A stretch of 62,771 nt of DNA, the filler included, from Platydemus manokwari (taxonomy: Eukaryota): assembly GCA_037951405.1 (NCBI GenBank). It is 6 parts of 6 records of this genome, joined end to end, with 100 filler letters (N's around TTAATTAATTAA, not from the genome) between each part and the next. Parts side by side here need not be neighbours in the genome. Positions count along the whole stretch, not along the records: positions 11,550 to 20,763 come from JBBMOY011282206.1; 5 more parts are not named here. One strand, given 5' to 3'. The notes under the pieces are model-generated. The model did no database searches. It saw only the letters and a list, made by a program, of their open reading frames with translations, and was not told where the DNA came from. Each line of letters opens with the position of its first letter. Within the stretch, counting starts at the first letter, position 1. Shown here piece after piece: positions 11,550-20,763 of the stretch. The position numbers were made by a program, and so were the translations under genes.

Positions 11550-11684
11550 GCCCCCAGATTTTTATGCCACTGGAATTACTAAACTTTTGTCTCGTTGGCA
11601 GAAATGTATCGAATCCAATGGGCTTTTTTTAGTCTTTTAAAGTTGCTGTTAGATAACGGCCATTATTTTTGCACCAACCTAATA
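11550..11684 (+). mobile_element. 3' end of a mariner element with right TIR and TA target site
   Basis: Reads PDFYATGITKLLSRWQKCIESNG (mariner C-terminus), then ACGGCCATTATTTTTGCACCAACCTAA-TA. Truncated by the assembly gap. Confidence 0.9.
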
Positions 11685-12758
11685 TAATAATAAAATTAAT
11701 ATGAATTGATAAAATACATTAATGAAATAATTAAAACAAAAATAATGATTGCCTAAAGTGTTATTGTTAAATAATGGTGAATGTGAACAATGATTATATT
11801 ATATTTTTCCATTTAGTAAATTGTGGAGTATTTATGACCATTGTGCGATTTTAACAGAAAGAAGAAAGAATAATAAAATACAATAAACGATAGGACCAAA
11901 TATTCATTTAGGATATTATATAAGTCAACTGTGTAATCATAATTTTCGTCCTTGTTTCCGCTTTTGGTAATGCAAACCAAGTTTCAAGCATTTGGAAATA
12001 ATAAAATAAATTGTATTTAAAGGAAAATAACAATAGAAGGTAGACAACAAAATGGTAAAACGAGAAAATTGCTATAAAATTGATGAAACAATTTAAAATA
12101 AATAGACAGTGATTGGTAACATTAGTTAAAAATAATTTGTAATGATAGTACAATTTATTGCATTCTCTTACCAAAAAATCTTGTACTTACGAGAGAACAC
12201 GACTGACCTTAAAATGATATATATTTTTGATCGTCCAAGGATTTTTTCAGACTGAATAAATTATTAATTTGTTATCATAGCTAACATAACATTTAACATC
12301 AATATTCAATTAATTGGAATAAAATTTCATAATTAACTCGTAACATTAGAAAATCCATTTTGATTTCTAATCTTTCTCGCGTGGATCTTAATCAGCTATC
12401 TACCTGAATATTGCACAGCGCATTTTAACAACTTTTGTGTTGTTTCGTATCTTGTTGAATTACAATGTTACTTTAAACAACTTTATTAGCACATGGTAAT
12501 TATTATTCATCTCTACGTGAATCAAACAATAATATTAATATCAGTTGACTAATGTGTACATTCAGTACCGAAATAATTTTCAACAGCCTGACAAACAATC
12601 TTTGTTACAATAATTAATCCACGTAGCTTAAAATCTTTAGATAATTCAGTTACATATTCTTGTAGAATTGTCGTCATGCATGTTACTGTAAGTTAAAATC
12701 AAACATCTAACCACACTTTGTAATAAATGTATTTGTGAATTCTCTTTCAAGAACAAAC

Positions 12759-13595
12759 CTAAAATTGTAGATCCATAACTAGTGAATCATCGATATATCC
12801 AATTTTATAATCATAGTAAATGGTTAATTCCAAAGGAAAAAGTTTAGAACCTCCTATAAATCCAAGATCTTTGAAACTTGCGTTGAGATCAATTTTGAAT
12901 TCTGGTGCTGCATTTGAAGTGCTATAAAGTGTGAAATTTGTTGTTGCAAAGTCTAACATTTTTTGAATTCTTAAAGCTACTATATCCAAGTTGATATTAT
13001 CAGGGACATCAATTTCAAAATTTCCAGGGTGTTCAGGAAATCGTTCAAATTTAATCATTTTAATGTATAAGTGCAGCCATCCTTCTTCAGAAAGACCGCA
13101 TGTTAAAGTTACATTTTCAGGTTTTGCATCCGTAAAATCTAAAATTTTCTTCACTTTTTCAGATTTACTAGATGTTTTTGATGACGATTGTGAAATACTT
13201 TTTCTTTGATCGCGATATAAAGACTTTTTCATCAAGACGATCTCTAAATTCAGATAAGAAATAGTTCCCGTATTGCGTGGATCAAGAAGTCGTGCTAAAA
13301 TATGTCTTTCAAGTTCATTGCAAGGTGCGTTAAGATCAATTAATGCAGCAATATAATTTTCATAAGTGACATTTTCTCGAATAGCATGAAATATTTGATT
13401 GTAAACAAGTTTAGTCTTTGGATTGGAATACCAAAATTCAACTCTTTGAATAAATTTTGCATATAATTCTGTTTCCAAGATGTAGTCCACCATTTCTTTG
13501 TCAAGATTCACTATATCTTTCTTTATAAGTTTTTTAATTGCATTAATACCTCCTTTTCCTTTCTTATCTTTTGAAACTTTATTGCTAGCTGACAT
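12759..13595 (-). CDS. uncharacterised 278-aa protein; degenerate EF-hand (LLDPRNTGTISY) and possible ubiquitin-like C-terminal fold
   Basis: 837-nt uninterrupted ORF in highly AT-rich DNA with protein-like composition. Lys-rich N-terminus and a helix-loop-helix with a DxxxxGxI loop. A TTATTTTAG acceptor (AG at 13613-13612) lies 16 nt upstream of the ATG. Confidence 0.85.
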   Translation of the reverse strand: MSASNKVSKDKKGKGGINAIKKLIKKDIVNLDKEMVDYILETELYAKFIQRVEFWYSNPKTKLVYNQIFHAIRENVTYENYIAALIDLNAPCNELERHILARLLDPRNTGTISYLNLEIVLMKKSLYRDQRKSISQSSSKTSSKSEKVKKILDFTDAKPENVTLTCGLSEEGWLHLYIKMIKFERFPEHPGNFEIDVPDNINLDIVALRIQKMLDFATTNFTLYSTSNAAPEFKIDLNASFKDLGFIGGSKLFPLELTIYYDYKIGYIDDSLVMDLQF

Positions 13596-14445
13596 TTAAA
13601 AATTTTTTAACCTAAAATAATCTTTATTATATTGTATATGAAAATCAATATTGGAATTTTATCAATTCGATTTTGTATTAATTTGTATCTAAATTAATTT
13701 GATAATTTTAAATTTGAGTTCGTTATTTAATTTGTTCCTATTTCTATCAAAGTTCTTAATTATTCGTATATTTGACATTTCACATTGTTAAAATAACATT
13801 CGAAGTTAGAAATATTTTATAGTAGGCGTGTGCTTAAATATTAATAGTTGAACAATAAATAAATCGAAATCACGAACTTGAATCTTGAAAATGTTATTAC
13901 CAGCTGATTCGAATCGAACAATACAATGGCGAAAAACTAATGACGAAAGCTAACTTTGCAAAAAGGTGTTCGAATCTTTAAGCTTCTGTTGGGTTGTATC
14001 AAATTAGGACAGAGAATTTAAGACATTTTTCCTCCGAATTTAGTGCTGTTCAGGTCTTTTAATTCAATAAAATATACAAATACATATATAAAATATACGT
14101 ACATTAATAATCATATAGATACAATTTACTGCCAAGCCTACATACACCCGAGCTCTTTTAGATTTATAAATTTATCTTACAAAATCTTCATAAGCTCTAA
14201 ACAATACATGCCAACATAATCATACACGTATTTACTGGGCAACATGAACAATGCATCATACCTACAGAGACTTTGGAATACACCTCGAAAGTGTCGATAC
14301 ACAAATACTTGATGAGCGTGCATGTCAATTGCCATTCAGATGCCTCCGAAATATGAATCCATTACTATTGTTACAAATAAAACGTTTAAAACTGAATAAT
14401 TTATTTAATACAATAACGATGTTAAATACATCATTTTATTATTGG

Positions 14446-14990
14446 TGATGTAATAACATCTTGGGAGGTTTATTGGATTTAGCAACTGACAATTGTGCGA
14501 TCACTAATCAACATGCAATCAAACAACATACACACGTCATACATACCACATTCACATTTCCATTTACGAATCTCCCTTACAACTATAATTCGATCGTGAT
14601 TTAGTGCACATCAACAACAGGCAACAAACATCAAGATAAGCCAATGGAACGAGATTTAGAACAGAATCTACTAATAAACTAGTATGTAGATGGTTCTAAT
14701 TAATAAAAGATCAAAGCTATAAATCATTAATTGAACCTGCACGATAAATAGGATCTCACGAGCAACAACCAGTCTTTTTATCGGTAGCTATTACTCTGTG
14801 TGAATATTAAGTGATTTTTCATGGCAGTTTTGTAGTTTTCTCCTACCAAGTATAAAAACTTTAAATTACTCTTTCCATCCTGAGTGATATCACTTGTTAG
14901 TTTATTATGATTTTTAATTGTATTCATTGACTGGTTGGATTTGTAATTCATTGTGATTCAAATTATTTTTTTCAGCATTCAACTTCAACA
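14446..14990 (+). mobile_element. solo LTR-like repeat (same family)
   Basis: TGATG...CAACA termini with AAGATAAGCCAATGG and CCAGTCTTTTTATCGGTA family motifs. No clear TSD. Confidence 0.6.
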
Positions 14991-15030
14991 CCATGTAGAC
15001 AAGATTGAATTCATTCGTTAATAACTGATA

Positions 15031-15560
15031 TGTTGAGTGTGAAACAAAACCAAATCAAGATACCTATGAAAAACACTCAAAAGGTTGAATCACACAGACT
15101 CAATAAGCACATTTACCAAGAGCCAATTAGATACCTCCAAAATATCAATCCTTAAATACAATTTGATTATCAATTGGAAAACATCAATAAGAGGCAATAA
15201 GCACTAAGATAAGCCAATGGCTCGAGAGTTAGATACCCTACTAATTAACTAATAGATAGACTATTTTAGAGAATAGAAAAGGTTGAGGTAATTGGTAAAC
15301 AGACAACGATCAATAAAAGGAGTCACATCTGGGTAGTAACTACCAGTCTTCTTTGATCGGTAACTTTAACCTAACTTACTATTTACTTTATCATTCTAAT
15401 GGCCAATCTATTATGATTATTGTTTATATTTCTGTTTTATCTTTCCAATGATCATGCACTCGAGTCTGTTTAAAGAGCGATTATTAACAGATTGATTTTA
15501 AAGTCTATTTTGTGTTTAAAATTAGATTTTATGGTATTTAACGTTCGTGGATATCAAGCA
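15031..15560 (+). mobile_element. solo LTR-like repeat (same family)
   Basis: Starts TGTTGAG and contains CCAATTAGATACCTCCA, AAGATAAGCCAATGG, CAATAAAAGG and CCAGTCTTCTTTGATCGGTAAC. Right end approximate. Confidence 0.6.
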
Positions 15561-17971
15561 GGTGATTATCGGATAGATTTCTTTATAATTTTGAAGAATG
15601 AATTTTTGAGTAAATTAAACAAGTTTAATATCGATTTTACAGTTGATTAATAAATTTCTCTCTTAAATTATTCAGAATTTTCAAAATGACTTAGGTATCT
15701 ATTAGTTATTATGAAATAAAGAATTTGGTGATAATATTGATTCATCATCATCGAAATAATTAATTGTGAGCTTATCAGTAAATCTCGCATATCTATTTTC
15801 ATTTTCCTGGGCCATAATAATATGGCGTTATATTTGCGATGATCAAACATGTATATTTGTGGAATTTGCAAATATTTTAAAACATAATTGTAAAACACAA
15901 TATGCGGTATGTGGTTTCTAATTATAACTTGTGATTTTGTCCAATAACCTCCTTGAATGTTATTGATTACCTTTTTTTATAAGAACTGTTTTTATCATTA
16001 TCTGATTCGGAAAACATTTAACGATTTAACGCATTAATCAATTGTAAATATCTAGAGCAGCTTACAAAAATGGATTATTTTTACAGTAAACTATATCACC
16101 GATTATATTTAATGATATTAGTAAAATCATTTTAAATTTTAGCAATTTTATATGACAGTCGAGATAAAATGTATTTGTGATGGAGTACTACAACAGTTCG
16201 GTTTATATGTTGGAGTTTCCAAAAAATGACTCTTTACAAACATTTATTGCATAATTTCTAGTGATTTGCTGTATATAAGTAGTAGCGTATAATTTTTATT
16301 AAGTGTTTTGAAAAAACTTTTGGCATGATTGTTTGGAATATTAATTTTGGTTTTTTACTTTCATTTTCCTCAATGTGAAATTACCCCAAAATCTGGAATT
16401 AAAAGAATAAATAATAATTCAATATAATAATAAGAATTATAATAATTTTGGTTGGCAATATTAATATTTTTAATAAATTTAAACACCATTTAAATAAATG
16501 GTAATTTATTATAATTTAATAATAATTTTGAAGTGACATTAAAATTTACTTAAATAAAATAAATTGGTTTAATGATAATTAAGTCCATATTATTGTTACC
16601 AACTTAAACTATAATAAATAAACCCATTATCCCGAGAATAATAGAAGAATTAAAACGCTTAACAAATGAAAAAATCAATAACAATAAACCGAAATTGCTG
16701 CCCTCGATTTAAATTGCAACCCATTATTTCTTTTGACTAGGTAGTCCAGTATATAAGATAGCCAAAAGAAACCACAAAACCCTTGTATTATTCGAGAAGA
16801 ACATTTATTCTTGAAAAACCGAGCAGTTTTATTTGCCTCGTAATTCTTCAGGAAGAGAATGGAAATGGACGACTAAAGATCGAAGTAAGATAGTTCATGT
16901 AAAACCTCATATAATTATCTAAACGCCGTATTCTTCATATTTATTGAGCAAAGCTCAAATTCCTTGAAATAGACACTTCCCCGATATCGAATAATGGGTT
17001 TGCTTGGTCTACGATCTTTCACCCTGAATTTCACATTGATTTGCAACGTTTAAGTTTATAGCGTAGTGTTGAGTGAGATGAAATTCTGCAAAATGAAAAA
17101 CGAAATTACACCTTGGAACCCTTTAACTTATATTGTGTTTAGTTCATTTGACTTTTCACATAGTTGGTTATTAACGTAAAATATGAGATCAATTTGTTTA
17201 CGATTCGATCGTAAACCTTACCTTGTGACCAAATCAAAGCTTTCAAATAAATCAAATACTTATATTAACGATTTACCACAATTTATATAATTACCAAATC
17301 AAGTGTTATGTAATTATTTATCAAAAACTATAATTATATTATCACAGCTTTCTTCAAATTAATCTCACTGACTATTAATGATCCACCAATTTTCACTTTC
17401 ATTTTCATTAACTTTTCAACTTAATCATCTGACATAATCAATTATCGATCAGTTTCCGAATTTACTATTTTTTAACTTTTCAGATTAGTCAATTATCAAC
17501 TCTGCTCTATTGGAGATTTTACTTTAGACTTGCTTTAATTTTCAAGTCTGATTTTCTGGTTGAAATGTTCCACTGTATACTATATCTTACTATATTTGTA
17601 GTGGTCAATTGGTACCAGTTTATTTAATTATTTTATATTTATCGTATAAATTAAATTTATTTGCTTATCAAGTTTCTTTTTTCAAAAGCTTTTCTATAGA
17701 TTCCTGTAAAAATTATTGCGACAAATGTTAAGGTTAATTCAATTTACAATAATATTATTAATTGTTTTCAAGCAGTTTCATTTTTATGATTGCTCACATA
17801 GTTCAAGATAATTATTTCAATAATGTGAATTGATCATTCTAACATTTTACTTTTTATATATTAAGTTCAATGTTCACTCTGCAATTTAAACTTGAAGCTT
17901 GTTTTAATTTATGATTGTTTAAAATTGACCTTGATAAAAACTTTGAATCATTTCAAAATTTGAAATATTTA

Positions 17972-19524
17972 ATGGCTGAAAATGATGATATTTTCTTCTT
18001 TACTTCTGAATCTGTTGGAGAAGGACATCCAGGTTAAAGTTCGTCATGTAGGCTCATATCTTTAATCTTTTTAATTTAGATAAAATGTGTGATCAGATTA
18101 GTGATGCTATTCTAGATGCTCATTTGAAACAAGATCCAAAAGCTAAAGTAGCATGTGGTTGCTATGTTATTATCAATTTCTATATTTAAAAATATTTGTA
18201 GAGGCATTTACTAAAACCGGTATGGTATTAATTGGAGGTGAAATAACTTCCTCTGCTGTCGTTAACTATTCAGAGATAGTTCGTAATACTATCAAACGAA
18301 TAGGATTTGACAGTTCAGAAAAAGGTTTAGACTATCGAACTTGTAATGTTTTGGTGGCAATTGAGCAGCAAAGTCCCGATATAGCTAAAGGTGTCCATGC
18401 TCAGCGTTCGGATGATGATATTGGGGCTGGTGATCAGGTAGAACAAATAATAATATTATTATATTACTGGATTAAATTACGAGGGTCTCATGTTTGGATA
18501 TGCAACAGATGAAACAAAAGAGTTCATGCCTCTTACATTAACTTTAGCTCACAAAATTAATCAACGTCTGGCTTACTGTCGAAGAAATGATATTCTTCCA
18601 TGGTTGAGACCTGATACAAAATCACAGGTTAATGAATTAATACAGTATAGAGATTATGTGAAAATCATATTATTCAATTGAATATTAGGTTACAGTAGCA
18701 TACAAAAATTATAAAGGTGGATTAATACCACTTTATGTTCACACAATAGTGATATCAGCTCAACACGATGAAAATGTCACACAGGAACAATTAAGATCGG
18801 ATTTGATGGAGCATGTAATCAAAGTAGTAATTGATAAGAAGATGCTGATTCCTGAAACTATTTACCATTTGAATCCATCGGGACGATTTGTTATTGGTGG
18901 CCCTCAAAGTGATGCTGGGCTAACGGGTCGGAAAATTATTGTCGACACTTACGGTGGCTGGGGAGCACATGGTGGTGGAGCATTTTCAGGCAAAGATGCA
19001 ACAAAAGTTGACAGATCTGCTGCATATGCAGCCAGATGGGTTGCGAAATCGTTAGTGAGTGAAGGTTTATGTAAACGAGTGCTAGTTCAAGTAATTATAA
19101 TTGTTATTCATCAATTTATGATTGGTTTTAATGCAGATATCATATGCTATTGGAATTGCTGCTCCTCTATCTATCTATGTGAACAGTTACCATTCTAGCT
19201 TGAAAAGCGATTCGGAATTGCTAGAAATCATTAATCTGAATTTTGATTTACGGCCTGGTATAATTATGAGGTTATAAAGAATGATTTCTTGTTTTAATTG
19301 AGATGATTTTGATAGATGCAATCAATTTGTTTATATTGTAAACAAAATGTTTGTTTTATACTCATCTTACATTATGTTTATATTGATTAATTATGTTAAT
19401 AAAAGGAAATCATATTTCTAGGGACTTGAAATTGAATGAGCCAATATTTGAACGAACAGCAACGTATGGCCATTTCGGGAGAGATGAATTCTTGTGGGAA
19501 ATTCCAAAAAAACTTAAATTTTAA
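17972..19524 (+). CDS. MAT2A: S-adenosylmethionine synthetase (methionine adenosyltransferase), 7 exons, 385 aa
   Basis: Exons 17972-18032, 18080-18157, 18202-18437, 18484-18627, 18689-19090, 19137-19270, 19422-19524 (1158 nt). All introns are GT..AG (47, 44, 46, 61, 46, 151 nt). Splicing gives an uninterrupted frame with [28 protein letters not shown] and the TYGHFGR..WE C-terminus. Confidence 0.98.
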
Positions 19525-20763
19525 TAAATAGAATTTTTAACTGTTTTTTTATGTGTGCAATCATTTTTAAAAATCATTGTGAGAATATTGATTATGTAAT
19601 TTGACTCAAAGATGTATGTAAATAATAAATGTATAATAGATGTTGTGAAATATCTCATATGTCCATTATATTTATACACTGACCTTTTAAATAAGCATTT
19701 TTACTGTGAACTTCAATGTAGAATTTTATATTTTTGGATAAACTTAATTTTAAATAATATCAAGCAATTTTTTTAATATCAAAATTACAAATAAATATTG
19801 TTTGGCCATTCCATGATTTCTTTTCGAAAAACTGAAATCATATAAAACGACATTTACGTTATTCAATAACTATTTATCGAATTAATTTTGAACAAATGAA
19901 AAAGCACTGCATTTACTTAATTTAAAAAATATTAAAATTACATATATCATCTTATCACTATTAAAATTCTGTTTGAAATGACAACGGTTGCAAATTGTAA
20001 TTTAAATCAATATACTTTCAAATGAAGATATAAATTTAAAGAAACTATTTAATTATTCATATTCTAATATATGAATGTGTAGTTAGTTACAACACACATT
20101 AATCATGATTATTCAAATATGTTAACAATAAGTTAAATGAAAATGATGTCTGTTTATTTGAAAACTACTATGCAGATTTCTCAAATCACATCAAAATAGG
20201 AAAATTTAAATACATGCTTATCAAAATGGAAATATTGTCCATGTTACGTTCTATTAAAACCTTTTAAAATATACACCAAAATTTAACCACTTTTTGTGTT
20301 TTAGAAATCAAAAACATACCTAATCGCAGATCTTTTAAAAGTAACCAAAAATTCTAAAAATTTAATATACACGTCTTCTAAAAAATTACATGAAAGAATA
20401 TCAATATTTTTATTTTTATTGGATAATAATTATAAATAAATCACTTATAAATTTTGTTTTTTATTAGATCTTATTTGCTTTATTTTAGTTATCATTTTTT
20501 CATGTTTTTAATACCTCTTGTGTTGGTGAAAGTCTTATCTAACTATTTTCGATATTTGACTACTTCTTGGATTATTTACATATTTGTTTCCTTATTATTG
20601 AAATCTTGAAACAAAATGGGAGCGGGTTTTAACAAGAATGTTTTGGAAATATTCCATCGGAAAATAGTTTTGTATGTTTGATCATCAAACATAAAATTTC
20701 AAAACCAGTCATCGTCACATTTTTCATATATTCACATTAACCACTGAGGAATAAATTATCTTC

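What the first reader, a model, noticed from the sequence alone, without database searches (positions are those of the whole stretch)
19271..19421. Last intron of SAM synthetase is enlarged and can adopt two mutually exclusive folds: candidate SAM-feedback splicing switch
Seen: five MAT introns are 44-61 nt but this one is 151 nt. Its ends can pair (ATGATTTCTT 19281-19290 with AGGAAATCAT 19404-19413, one G-U), placing a stem 10 nt from the donor and 8 nt from the acceptor, over the branch/pyrimidine region. Fold A nests TGAGATGA 19299-19306 / TCATCTTA 19362-19369, GATAGATG 19311-19318 / TGTTTGTT 19348-19355 (wobble-rich) and TTTGTTTA 19326-19333 / TAAACAAA 19339-19346. Because TGTTTATATTG occurs twice (19328, 19375), an alternative fold B pairs 19337-19350 with 19369-19382 (13/14) plus AATCAAT 19320-19326 / ATTGATT 19382-19388, which excludes the inner stems of A. 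Established: the phase-2 R|DL position matches the terminal intron of vertebrate MAT2A, whose retention is controlled by SAM through METTL16, and nematode sams genes are also SAM-regulated through splicing. No UACAGAGAA nonamer is visible here. Inference: a lineage-specific, structure-based retention switch. Caveat: AU-rich RNA pairs easily by chance.
Basis: partly seen in the sequence, partly recalled or inferred. Interest (0 to 1): 0.7.

Follow-up and report, generated by a model that had tools for sequence, protein, structure and literature searches.

The report
Enlarged hairpin-forming last intron of MAT
The last intron of this SAM-synthetase gene really is three times longer than its neighbours and folds into a long hairpin, but nothing here links it to SAM sensing, so it is most likely an ordinary intron carrying a self-folding insertion.

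Summary
The + strand carries a complete 7-exon, 385-aa SAM synthetase (MAT) gene. Its introns are 47, 44, 46, 61, 46 and 151 nt.

The intron folds better than shuffles (z about -2.6). An 84-nt central hairpin scores z -3.7 on the sense strand. About 3% of local 151-nt windows do as well as the whole intron, and a 10-bp terminal stem arises in about 10% of shuffles.

The real competitor for the intron's 5' arm is a perfect 10-nt complement in exon 6. The 8-mer GAAATCAT or its complement occurs five times, all within 19224-19841.

No METTL16 nonamer, SAM riboswitch or other Rfam family is present. The 5' arm is absent from the start of the same intron in the only close relative. Orthologous introns elsewhere are 56 and 491 nt. 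No RNA data or orthologous intron DNA could be reached.

Best reading (0.5): a constitutive intron enlarged by a lineage-specific hairpin-forming insertion. A regulated retention switch (about 0.15) and an intron-hosted small RNA (about 0.12) stay open.

The parts
17972..19524 (+). Complete SAM synthetase (MAT) gene: 7 exons, 385 aa, stop codon TAA at 19522-19524
   Evidence: Exon joins restore an uninterrupted MAT protein. Exon 5 hits PF02772/PF02773 proteins at up to 91% identity.
19271..19421 (+). Intron 6, 151 nt, GT..AG, phase 2 (R|DL). If retained, a stop follows after two codons.
   Evidence: An intron sits at the same position and phase in L009 (56 nt) and L011 (491 nt).
19223..19232 (+). 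Site a in exon 6 (codons for L-E-I-I-N): a perfect 10-nt complement of arm b
   Evidence: pair I5. Duplex energy -10.4 kcal/mol. A helix this long arises in 1% of shuffles.
19280..19290 (+). Arm b, the 5' arm of the outer stem. It can pair with a, c or e.
19295..19374 (+). Central long imperfect hairpin: 32 bp including 4 G-U pairs. It is present in every predicted conformer.
   Evidence: Sense strand MFE -19.3, z -3.73, 0/200 shuffles. Antisense MFE -11.8, z -2.04. Pair probabilities 0.84-0.99, about 0.99 in the stem cores.
19381..19401 (+). Small weak hairpin containing the likeliest branch-point motif (TTAAT, 19396-19400, 22 nt from the acceptor)
   Evidence: MFE structure. The branch-point assignment is inferred from its distance and the YURAY-like motif.
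19404..19414 (+). Arm c, the 3' arm of the outer stem, 8 nt from the acceptor
   Evidence: The b:c duplex is -10.9 kcal/mol.
19812..19842 (+). Short hairpin d:e about 290 nt past the stop codon. Its arms repeat 10 nt of arm b and 10 nt of arm c.
   Evidence: Its own fold is not unusual (z -0.63).
19523..19528 (+). First AATAAA, overlapping the stop codon. Further copies lie at 19624 and 19790.
   Evidence: Which one is used is unknown.

Best explanation
Intron 6 is an ordinary, constitutively removed U2-type intron at an ancient MAT intron position. In this lineage it was enlarged from the usual 45-60 nt by about 100 nt of self-complementary sequence. The extra sequence folds into a long hairpin (19295-19374). 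This keeps the donor and the branch point effectively close, as zipper stems do in long yeast introns. That is how such an insertion is tolerated in a genome whose introns are otherwise minimal. It does not sense SAM. Shown here: the intron, its size, the hairpin and its better-than-shuffle stability. Inferred: the insertion origin, constitutive splicing and the zipper-like effect.
For: Five of the six introns are 44-61 nt. The orthologous intron in another short-intron, AT-rich relative is 56 nt, and in a third lineage it is 491 nt, so length at this site varies freely. Removing 19291-19395 would leave a 46-nt intron, which is the typical size (sequence). The hairpin is stable in all contexts and lies between the donor and the likely branch point. 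The start of the same intron in the closest relative (P0001, 91% identical in exon 5) cannot contain the ATGA core of arm b, and exon site a is also changed there. This argues against a conserved device. There is no METTL16 motif and no Rfam family. Statistics are modest. About 3% of local windows fold as well. The terminal stem arises in about 10% of shuffles. In exon context the MFE is only about 1 sd better than shuffles, and ensemble diversity is not unusual. Zipper stems that shorten the donor-to-branch-point distance are documented in yeast (PMC2536676; PMC12350175).
Against: The five-fold clustering of one 8-mer in 620 nt is not expected by chance: 0/100 shuffles and 1/200 for 8-mers with at least 2 G/C. 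The perfect 10-bp match of arm b to exon 6 has p about 0.01. All four transition-type mismatches in the hairpin are G-U on the sense strand and none on the antisense, which hints at selection on the RNA. No target-site duplication and no second full copy was found to prove an insertion.
Confidence: 0.5

Rival explanations
1. A structure-based regulated (detained) intron. Arm b pairs either with exon-6 site a, leaving the branch point and acceptor open so that splicing proceeds, or with site c, burying them so that the intron is retained. Retention gives a transcript with a stop after two codons. A factor or metabolite, possibly reporting SAM, shifts the balance. The matching d:e hairpin downstream could take part.
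For: The a:b and b:c conformers differ by about 1 kcal/mol in ensemble energy. The branch-point region is 0.62 unpaired in a:b and 0.11 in b:c. The acceptor region is 0.41 against 0.22. Probabilities swing with context: a:b 0.70 and b:c 0.18 in one, 0.35 and 0.55 in another. Other support: the motif cluster, sense-strand-specific stability, and splicing-level feedback on MAT known in mammals and nematodes (PMC8208822, PMC9778287).
Against: There is no sensor element: no METTL16/METT-10 nonamer and no riboswitch model hit. The a and b sites are not conserved in P0001. Shuffled introns are equally or more conformationally diverse. No expression data exist.
Confidence: 0.15
2. The intron hosts a small RNA gene, most plausibly a pre-miRNA-like hairpin (19295-19374) processed from the excised or unspliced intron.
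For: The hairpin is 80 nt with 32 bp. It scores z -3.73 on the sense strand and -2.04 on the antisense. It has single-stranded flanks in the MFE. It sits in the only enlarged intron of a housekeeping gene.
Against: No Rfam miRNA or snoRNA family comes near threshold: best E 0.71, scores 16-18 bits against gathering scores of 50-95. The apical loop is only 3 nt. The intron has no CUGA box D and no ACA near a 3' end, so C/D and H/ACA snoRNAs are excluded by inspection. No small-RNA data exist.
Confidence: 0.12
3. The 151 nt are two ordinary mini-introns (19271-19315, 45 nt, and 19376-19421, 46 nt) flanking an optional 60-nt in-frame exon (19316-19375).
For: An AG preceded by a T-rich tract lies exactly 45 nt from the donor, and a GT lies exactly 46 nt from the acceptor. 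The exon-6 frame stays open for 39 codons across this part.
Against: MAT alignments show no residues between R and DL in any relative. The internal donor lacks the G at -1 that five of the six real donors have. The encoded peptide is only what T-rich sequence gives. Both internal sites lie in or next to the stable hairpin.
Confidence: 0.05

Closest known systems
Vertebrate MAT2A detained last intron controlled by METTL16 (PMC9778287; Pendleton et al. 2017 as cited there)
   Same: Same enzyme, and the affected intron is the last one. Retention would likewise give an unproductive transcript.
   Different: The vertebrate system depends on UACAGAGAA hairpins in the 3' UTR, which are reported only in vertebrates. 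None is present here. Whether the intron position is exactly homologous was not tested here.
Nematode sams-3/4/5 3' splice-site m6A by METT-10 (PMC8208822)
   Same: Splicing-level negative feedback on a SAM synthetase in an invertebrate, using a stem-loop at a splice site.
   Different: That mechanism needs the nonamer with the acceptor AG inside it, at the intron 2/exon 3 junction. None of the six acceptors here carries it.
Zipper stems and downstream stems of long yeast introns (PMC2536676; PMC12350175)
   Same: A stable stem between donor and branch point shortens the effective distance in an unusually long intron.
   Different: The organism is different and unidentified. The effect is inferred from prediction only. 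The outer b:c stem would enclose the branch point rather than help it.
Intronic pre-miRNA hairpins and mirtrons
   Same: A sense-specific hairpin of about 80 nt and 32 bp with a low z-score, inside an intron.
   Different: No family match, a very small apical loop, a branched whole-intron fold unlike a mirtron, and no small-RNA evidence.
MITE-like short palindromic insertions
   Same: Terminal inverted repeats of 10-13 nt, and a second short hairpin about 400 nt away with the same arms.
   Different: No target-site duplication. No other copy in the 9.2-kb piece. No other copy among the contigs of run X1 that were laid at 80% likeness or more (inconclusive).

Membership tests
U2-type spliceosomal intron | GT..AG ends, and removal restores the conserved reading frame | tested here: met
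   splicing 19270 to 19422 gives the conserved ...RPGIIMR|DLKLNEP... sequence. The same junction occurs in L009 and L011.
METTL16/METT-10 substrate (MAT2A hairpins, sams 3' splice site) | UACAGAGAA-type nonamer | tested here: not met
   No match within one mismatch inside 17972-19900. The two TACAG occurrences are followed by unrelated bases.
METTL16/METT-10 substrate (MAT2A hairpins, sams 3' splice site) | Nonamer placed at a regulated acceptor AG or in a 3' UTR hairpin loop | tested here: not met
   The six acceptors end in TTTAG, TGTAG, ACGAG, ATTAG, TGCAG and TCTAG.
METTL16/METT-10 substrate (MAT2A hairpins, sams 3' splice site) | Splicing or retention responds to SAM level | not testable with these tools
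   No RNA run holds the locus.
SAM riboswitch classes and other Rfam families | Covariance-model match | tested here: not met
   Nothing in the intron at E <= 1 across the piece. In the focused scan the best hit had E 0.71 and 16-18 bits, far below gathering scores, and none was a riboswitch.
pre-miRNA | Hairpin of about 60-80 nt that is much more stable than shuffles | tested here: met
   z -3.73, 0/200 shuffles
pre-miRNA | Discrete small RNAs of about 22 nt from the arms, or membership of a known family | tested here: inconclusive
   No known family matches. Small-RNA data are not available.
Box C/D or H/ACA snoRNA | Boxes C and D with a terminal stem, or H and ACA boxes with two hairpins | tested here: not met
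   The intron has no CUGA and no ACA 3 nt from a plausible 3' end (sequence). No Rfam snoRNA hit of note.
MITE | Terminal inverted repeats | tested here: met
   Arms of 10-13 nt (pair I3)
MITE | Target-site duplication and many genomic copies | tested here: inconclusive
   No duplication is visible at the arm boundaries. No second copy in the piece. No piece of X1 contigs was laid on the intron at 80% likeness or more, but the run's own contig was filtered out too.

The most novel reading that the evidence does not exclude
A METTL16-independent autoregulatory device in an invertebrate MAT gene. Exon-6 site a and intron site c compete for intron arm b and so open or bury the branch point and acceptor of the last intron. 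A matching hairpin downstream of the gene acts as a further partner. This would be a structure-based counterpart of the vertebrate MAT2A detained intron, evolved independently at the same intron.
Probability: 0.1. Interest if true: 0.75.

Novelty: new member of a known kind. Interest (0 to 1): 0.3.

Why it matters
SAM synthetase is feedback-controlled through splicing in mammals (last-intron detention) and in nematodes (3' splice-site m6A). Whether other invertebrate lineages do this, and how, is open. A structure-only switch at the same last intron would show convergent evolution of metabolite feedback on splicing without the METTL16 motif. As the evidence stands, the locus mainly illustrates something more ordinary. 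In a genome with minimal introns, the one long intron of the gene is the one whose extra sequence folds on itself.

Tried and rejected

The contig of the closest relative, P0001, could not be read, so no covariation test was possible.
- The look-up of sequencing runs found one run, not RNA.
- Read laying on that run laid only short pieces under 95% likeness from other organisms, on conserved exon parts. The run's own contig was filtered out, so the result says little.
- The metagenome scan gave no relative above 73% in exon 6. Most hits were intronless, either cDNA-like contigs or MAT genes without introns.
- The GTDB genome scan gave only bacterial MetK at 53% or less.

**Searches with negative results**
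- Tandem Repeats Finder found nothing in the intron, so it did not grow by tandem duplication.
- The Rfam scans were negative, and ARAGORN found no tRNA.

**Ideas rejected**
- Box C/D and H/ACA snoRNA readings, by inspection of the sequence.
- A resemblance of the hairpin's 5' arm to the bantam miRNA. I recalled this from memory only. It has a seed mismatch and no Rfam support, so I did not pursue it.

**Left unused**
- The third word-based protein search. The a and b sites were already seen to be unconserved in P0001.

**Organism**
- It could not be named. A feature search of the neighbouring ORF points to Rotifera. That ORF has a single homologue in 5.8 billion proteins.

Full report
**1. 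What is there**

The piece (11550-20763) is AT-rich, with 21-38% GC. On the + strand it carries a complete SAM synthetase (MAT) gene. Seven exons give an uninterrupted 385-aa protein with all the hallmark MAT motifs:
- 17972-18032
- 18080-18157
- 18202-18437
- 18484-18627
- 18689-19090
- 19137-19270
- 19422-19524

The six GT..AG introns measure 47, 44, 46, 61, 46 and 151 nt. Exon 5, searched by reference, hits PF02772/PF02773 proteins. Intron 6 (19271-19421) is phase 2 between R and DL. If it is retained, the frame stops after two codons and the last 33 residues are lost.

I joined the exons only inside sandbox scripts, from window coordinates. I did this to check the reading frame and to run a local tblastn against loci already fetched. 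Database searches used single exons or ORFs by reference.

**2.

B1 has one mismatch. The repeated 11-mer is real.

In the thermodynamic ensemble of the isolated intron:
- The outer stem, stem A1 and stem A3 have pair probabilities of 0.72-1.00, about 0.99 in their cores.
- Fold B has probability about 0.005. Enforcing it costs 4.6-5.0 kcal/mol.

So the proposed A/B pair is not a balanced switch.

**3. Is the structure more than chance?**

| Test | Result |
|---|---|
| Whole intron, sense strand | MFE -29.9 kcal/mol, z -2.54, 0/200 shuffles |
| Whole intron, 400 shuffles | z -2.65, 5/400 |
| Whole intron, antisense | z -1.27 |
| Central hairpin 19293-19376, sense | MFE -19.3, z -3.73, 0/200 |
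| Central hairpin, antisense | MFE -11.8, z -2.04 |
| 151-nt windows across the piece, both strands | 5/182 reach z <= -2.5; 10/182 reach z <= -2 |
| Terminal helix of 10 bp or more in shuffles | about 10% |
| Intron shuffled inside fixed exons | MFE only about 1 sd better; ensemble diversity not unusual |

All four transition-type imperfections in the central hairpin are G-U on the sense strand and none on the antisense. That is a weak hint (about 1 in 16) of selection at the RNA level.

Overall the hairpin is real and moderately non-random, and the outer stem taken alone is not.

**4. New observations**

*A competitor in exon 6.* Arm b (19280-19289) has a perfect 10-nt Watson-Crick complement in exon 6, site a (19223-19232) (pair I5). 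A helix that long between exon 6 and the first 30 nt of the intron occurs in 1% of shuffles.

*Near-equal conformers.* Duplex energies are -10.4 kcal/mol for a:b and -10.9 for b:c.

| Conformer, folding 19137-19525 | Ensemble energy (kcal/mol) | Branch-point region 19395-19401 unpaired | Acceptor region unpaired |
|---|---|---|---|
| a:b forced | -84.6 | 0.62 | 0.41 |
| b:c forced | -83.7 | 0.11 | 0.22 |

The donor region is unaffected. The populations depend on context. In the exon 6 to exon 7 context, a:b is 0.70 and b:c is 0.18. With 375 nt more downstream sequence, they are 0.35 and 0.55.

*A motif cluster.* The 8-mer GAAATCAT or its complement occurs five times in the whole window, all within 19224-19841. 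The expected count is 1.36, and 0/100 shuffles reach five. Among 8-mers with at least two G/C, a cluster of five in 650 nt appears in 1 of 200 shuffles of the piece.

Two of the five copies form a short hairpin, d:e (19812-19842), about 290 nt past the stop codon. Its arms repeat 10 nt of arm b and 10 nt of arm c. Its own fold is unremarkable (z -0.63). Removing 19291-19395 from intron 6 would leave a 46-nt intron whose b-loop-c core resembles d:e. Whether d:e is transcribed with MAT is unknown. AATAAA occurs at 19523 (overlapping the stop), 19624 and 19790.

**5. Tests against known systems**

- The METTL16/METT-10 nonamer is absent. There is no match within one mismatch in the gene. None of the six acceptors carries it. 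The two TACAG occurrences are followed by unrelated bases.
- The literature confirms two points. Nematode regulation needs the nonamer in a stem-loop at the intron 2/exon 3 acceptor. The vertebrate 3' UTR hairpins are reported only in vertebrates (PMC8208822; PMC9778287).
- No Rfam family matches, including SAM riboswitches, miRNAs and snoRNAs.
- The intron has no box D (CUGA) and no suitably placed ACA box.

**6. Comparative evidence**

The intron position is old.
- L009, a genomic contig with 31% GC and short introns, has a 56-nt phase-2 intron at the same codon.
- L011 has one of 491 nt.
- ORF fragments P0003-P0006 end right after the equivalent codon, as a GTAA-type donor would cause. One of these clusters contains a Rodentolepis nana protein.

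So the length at this site is free to vary.

The only close relative is P0001, 91% identical in exon 5. It is an ORF that reads through its intron 5 and ten codons into its intron 6. From its residues, the first 34 nt of that intron cannot contain ATGA, the core of arm b. Its exon-6 residues (D-I-V where this gene has E-I-I) rule out site a as well. At least these two elements are therefore not conserved at the same places.

The metagenome and GTDB scans found no closer relative.

**7. Expression**

One public run holds the locus and it is not RNA. Laying its contigs gave only short pieces under 95% likeness, from other organisms, on conserved exon parts. The run's own contig was evidently filtered out. 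The only usable point is weak: no extra copies of the intron were laid at 80% likeness or more. This speaks, inconclusively, against a high-copy repeat family.

**8. Interpretation**

*Most likely (0.5).* This is an ordinary, constitutively spliced intron at an ancient position. It was enlarged in this lineage by about 100 nt of self-complementary sequence. The resulting hairpin sits between the donor and the likely branch point. It would shorten their effective distance, as zipper stems do in long yeast introns (PMC2536676; PMC12350175). That explains why a threefold-longer intron is tolerated in a gene whose other introns are minimal.

*Rivals.*
- A regulated retention device using the competition of a and c for b (0.15).
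- An intron-hosted hairpin RNA such as a miRNA precursor (0.12).
- Two mini-introns of 45 and 46 nt around an optional 60-nt in-frame exon (0.05).

The motif cluster and the a:b match keep the regulatory reading alive. The lack of any sensor element, the lack of conservation in P0001 and the modest statistics keep it a minority view.

**9. Organism**

The organism is not identified. MAT exon 5 is most like metazoan MATs: 74% identity to an oyster protein and to a cluster that includes a cestode protein. The neighbouring 278-aa ORF has only one homologue in 5.8 billion proteins. Its nearest feature-space neighbours are rotifer and EF-hand clusters. This is a lead only.

**10. Verdict**

The SAM-switch interpretation is neither supported nor excluded. 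Its specific A/B form is rejected, and a different competing pairing was found. Interest is modest until RNA data or orthologous introns are examined.

Noticed in passing
window 19812-19842: A short hairpin about 290 nt downstream of the MAT stop codon. Its two arms are identical over 10 nt each to the 5' and 3' arms of the intron-6 outer stem. Together with the exon-6 site, this makes five copies of one 8-mer within 620 nt.
   Followed up: partly
window 12759-13595 (-): A single-exon 278-aa ORF with an EF-hand-like loop. It has no Pfam hit above cut-off and only one homologue (P0126, 59% identity, a Logan contig) among 5.8 billion proteins. Its nearest feature-space neighbours are EF-hand and rotifer clusters.
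   Followed up: partly
window 14350-14800: These windows fold well beyond shuffles. In the 25-shuffle scan, 14350 (+) scored z -3.5 and 14650 (-) scored z -4.5. With 200 shuffles 14650 (-) scored z -2.9. No Rfam hit, tRNA or long inverted repeat was found there.
   Followed up: partly
window 19523-19528: An AATAAA overlaps the MAT stop codon, which would give a 3' UTR of only about 20 nt if used. Alternative signals lie at 19624 and 19790.
   Followed up: no
window 20640-20690 (-): A weak match to the box C/D snoRNA family sn3071 (26 bits against a gathering score of 40, E 0.054), in the region where a new + strand ORF seems to start (ATG at 20617).
   Followed up: no
window 19316-19375: The exon-6 reading frame stays open for 39 codons inside intron 6. 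An AG lies 45 nt from the donor and a GT lies 46 nt from the acceptor, so the intron could in principle be read as two typical mini-introns around a 60-nt in-frame segment.
   Followed up: partly
run X1: The only public run holding the locus also contains several MAT fragments under 95% alike from other organisms, so it is a mixed sample.
   Followed up: no
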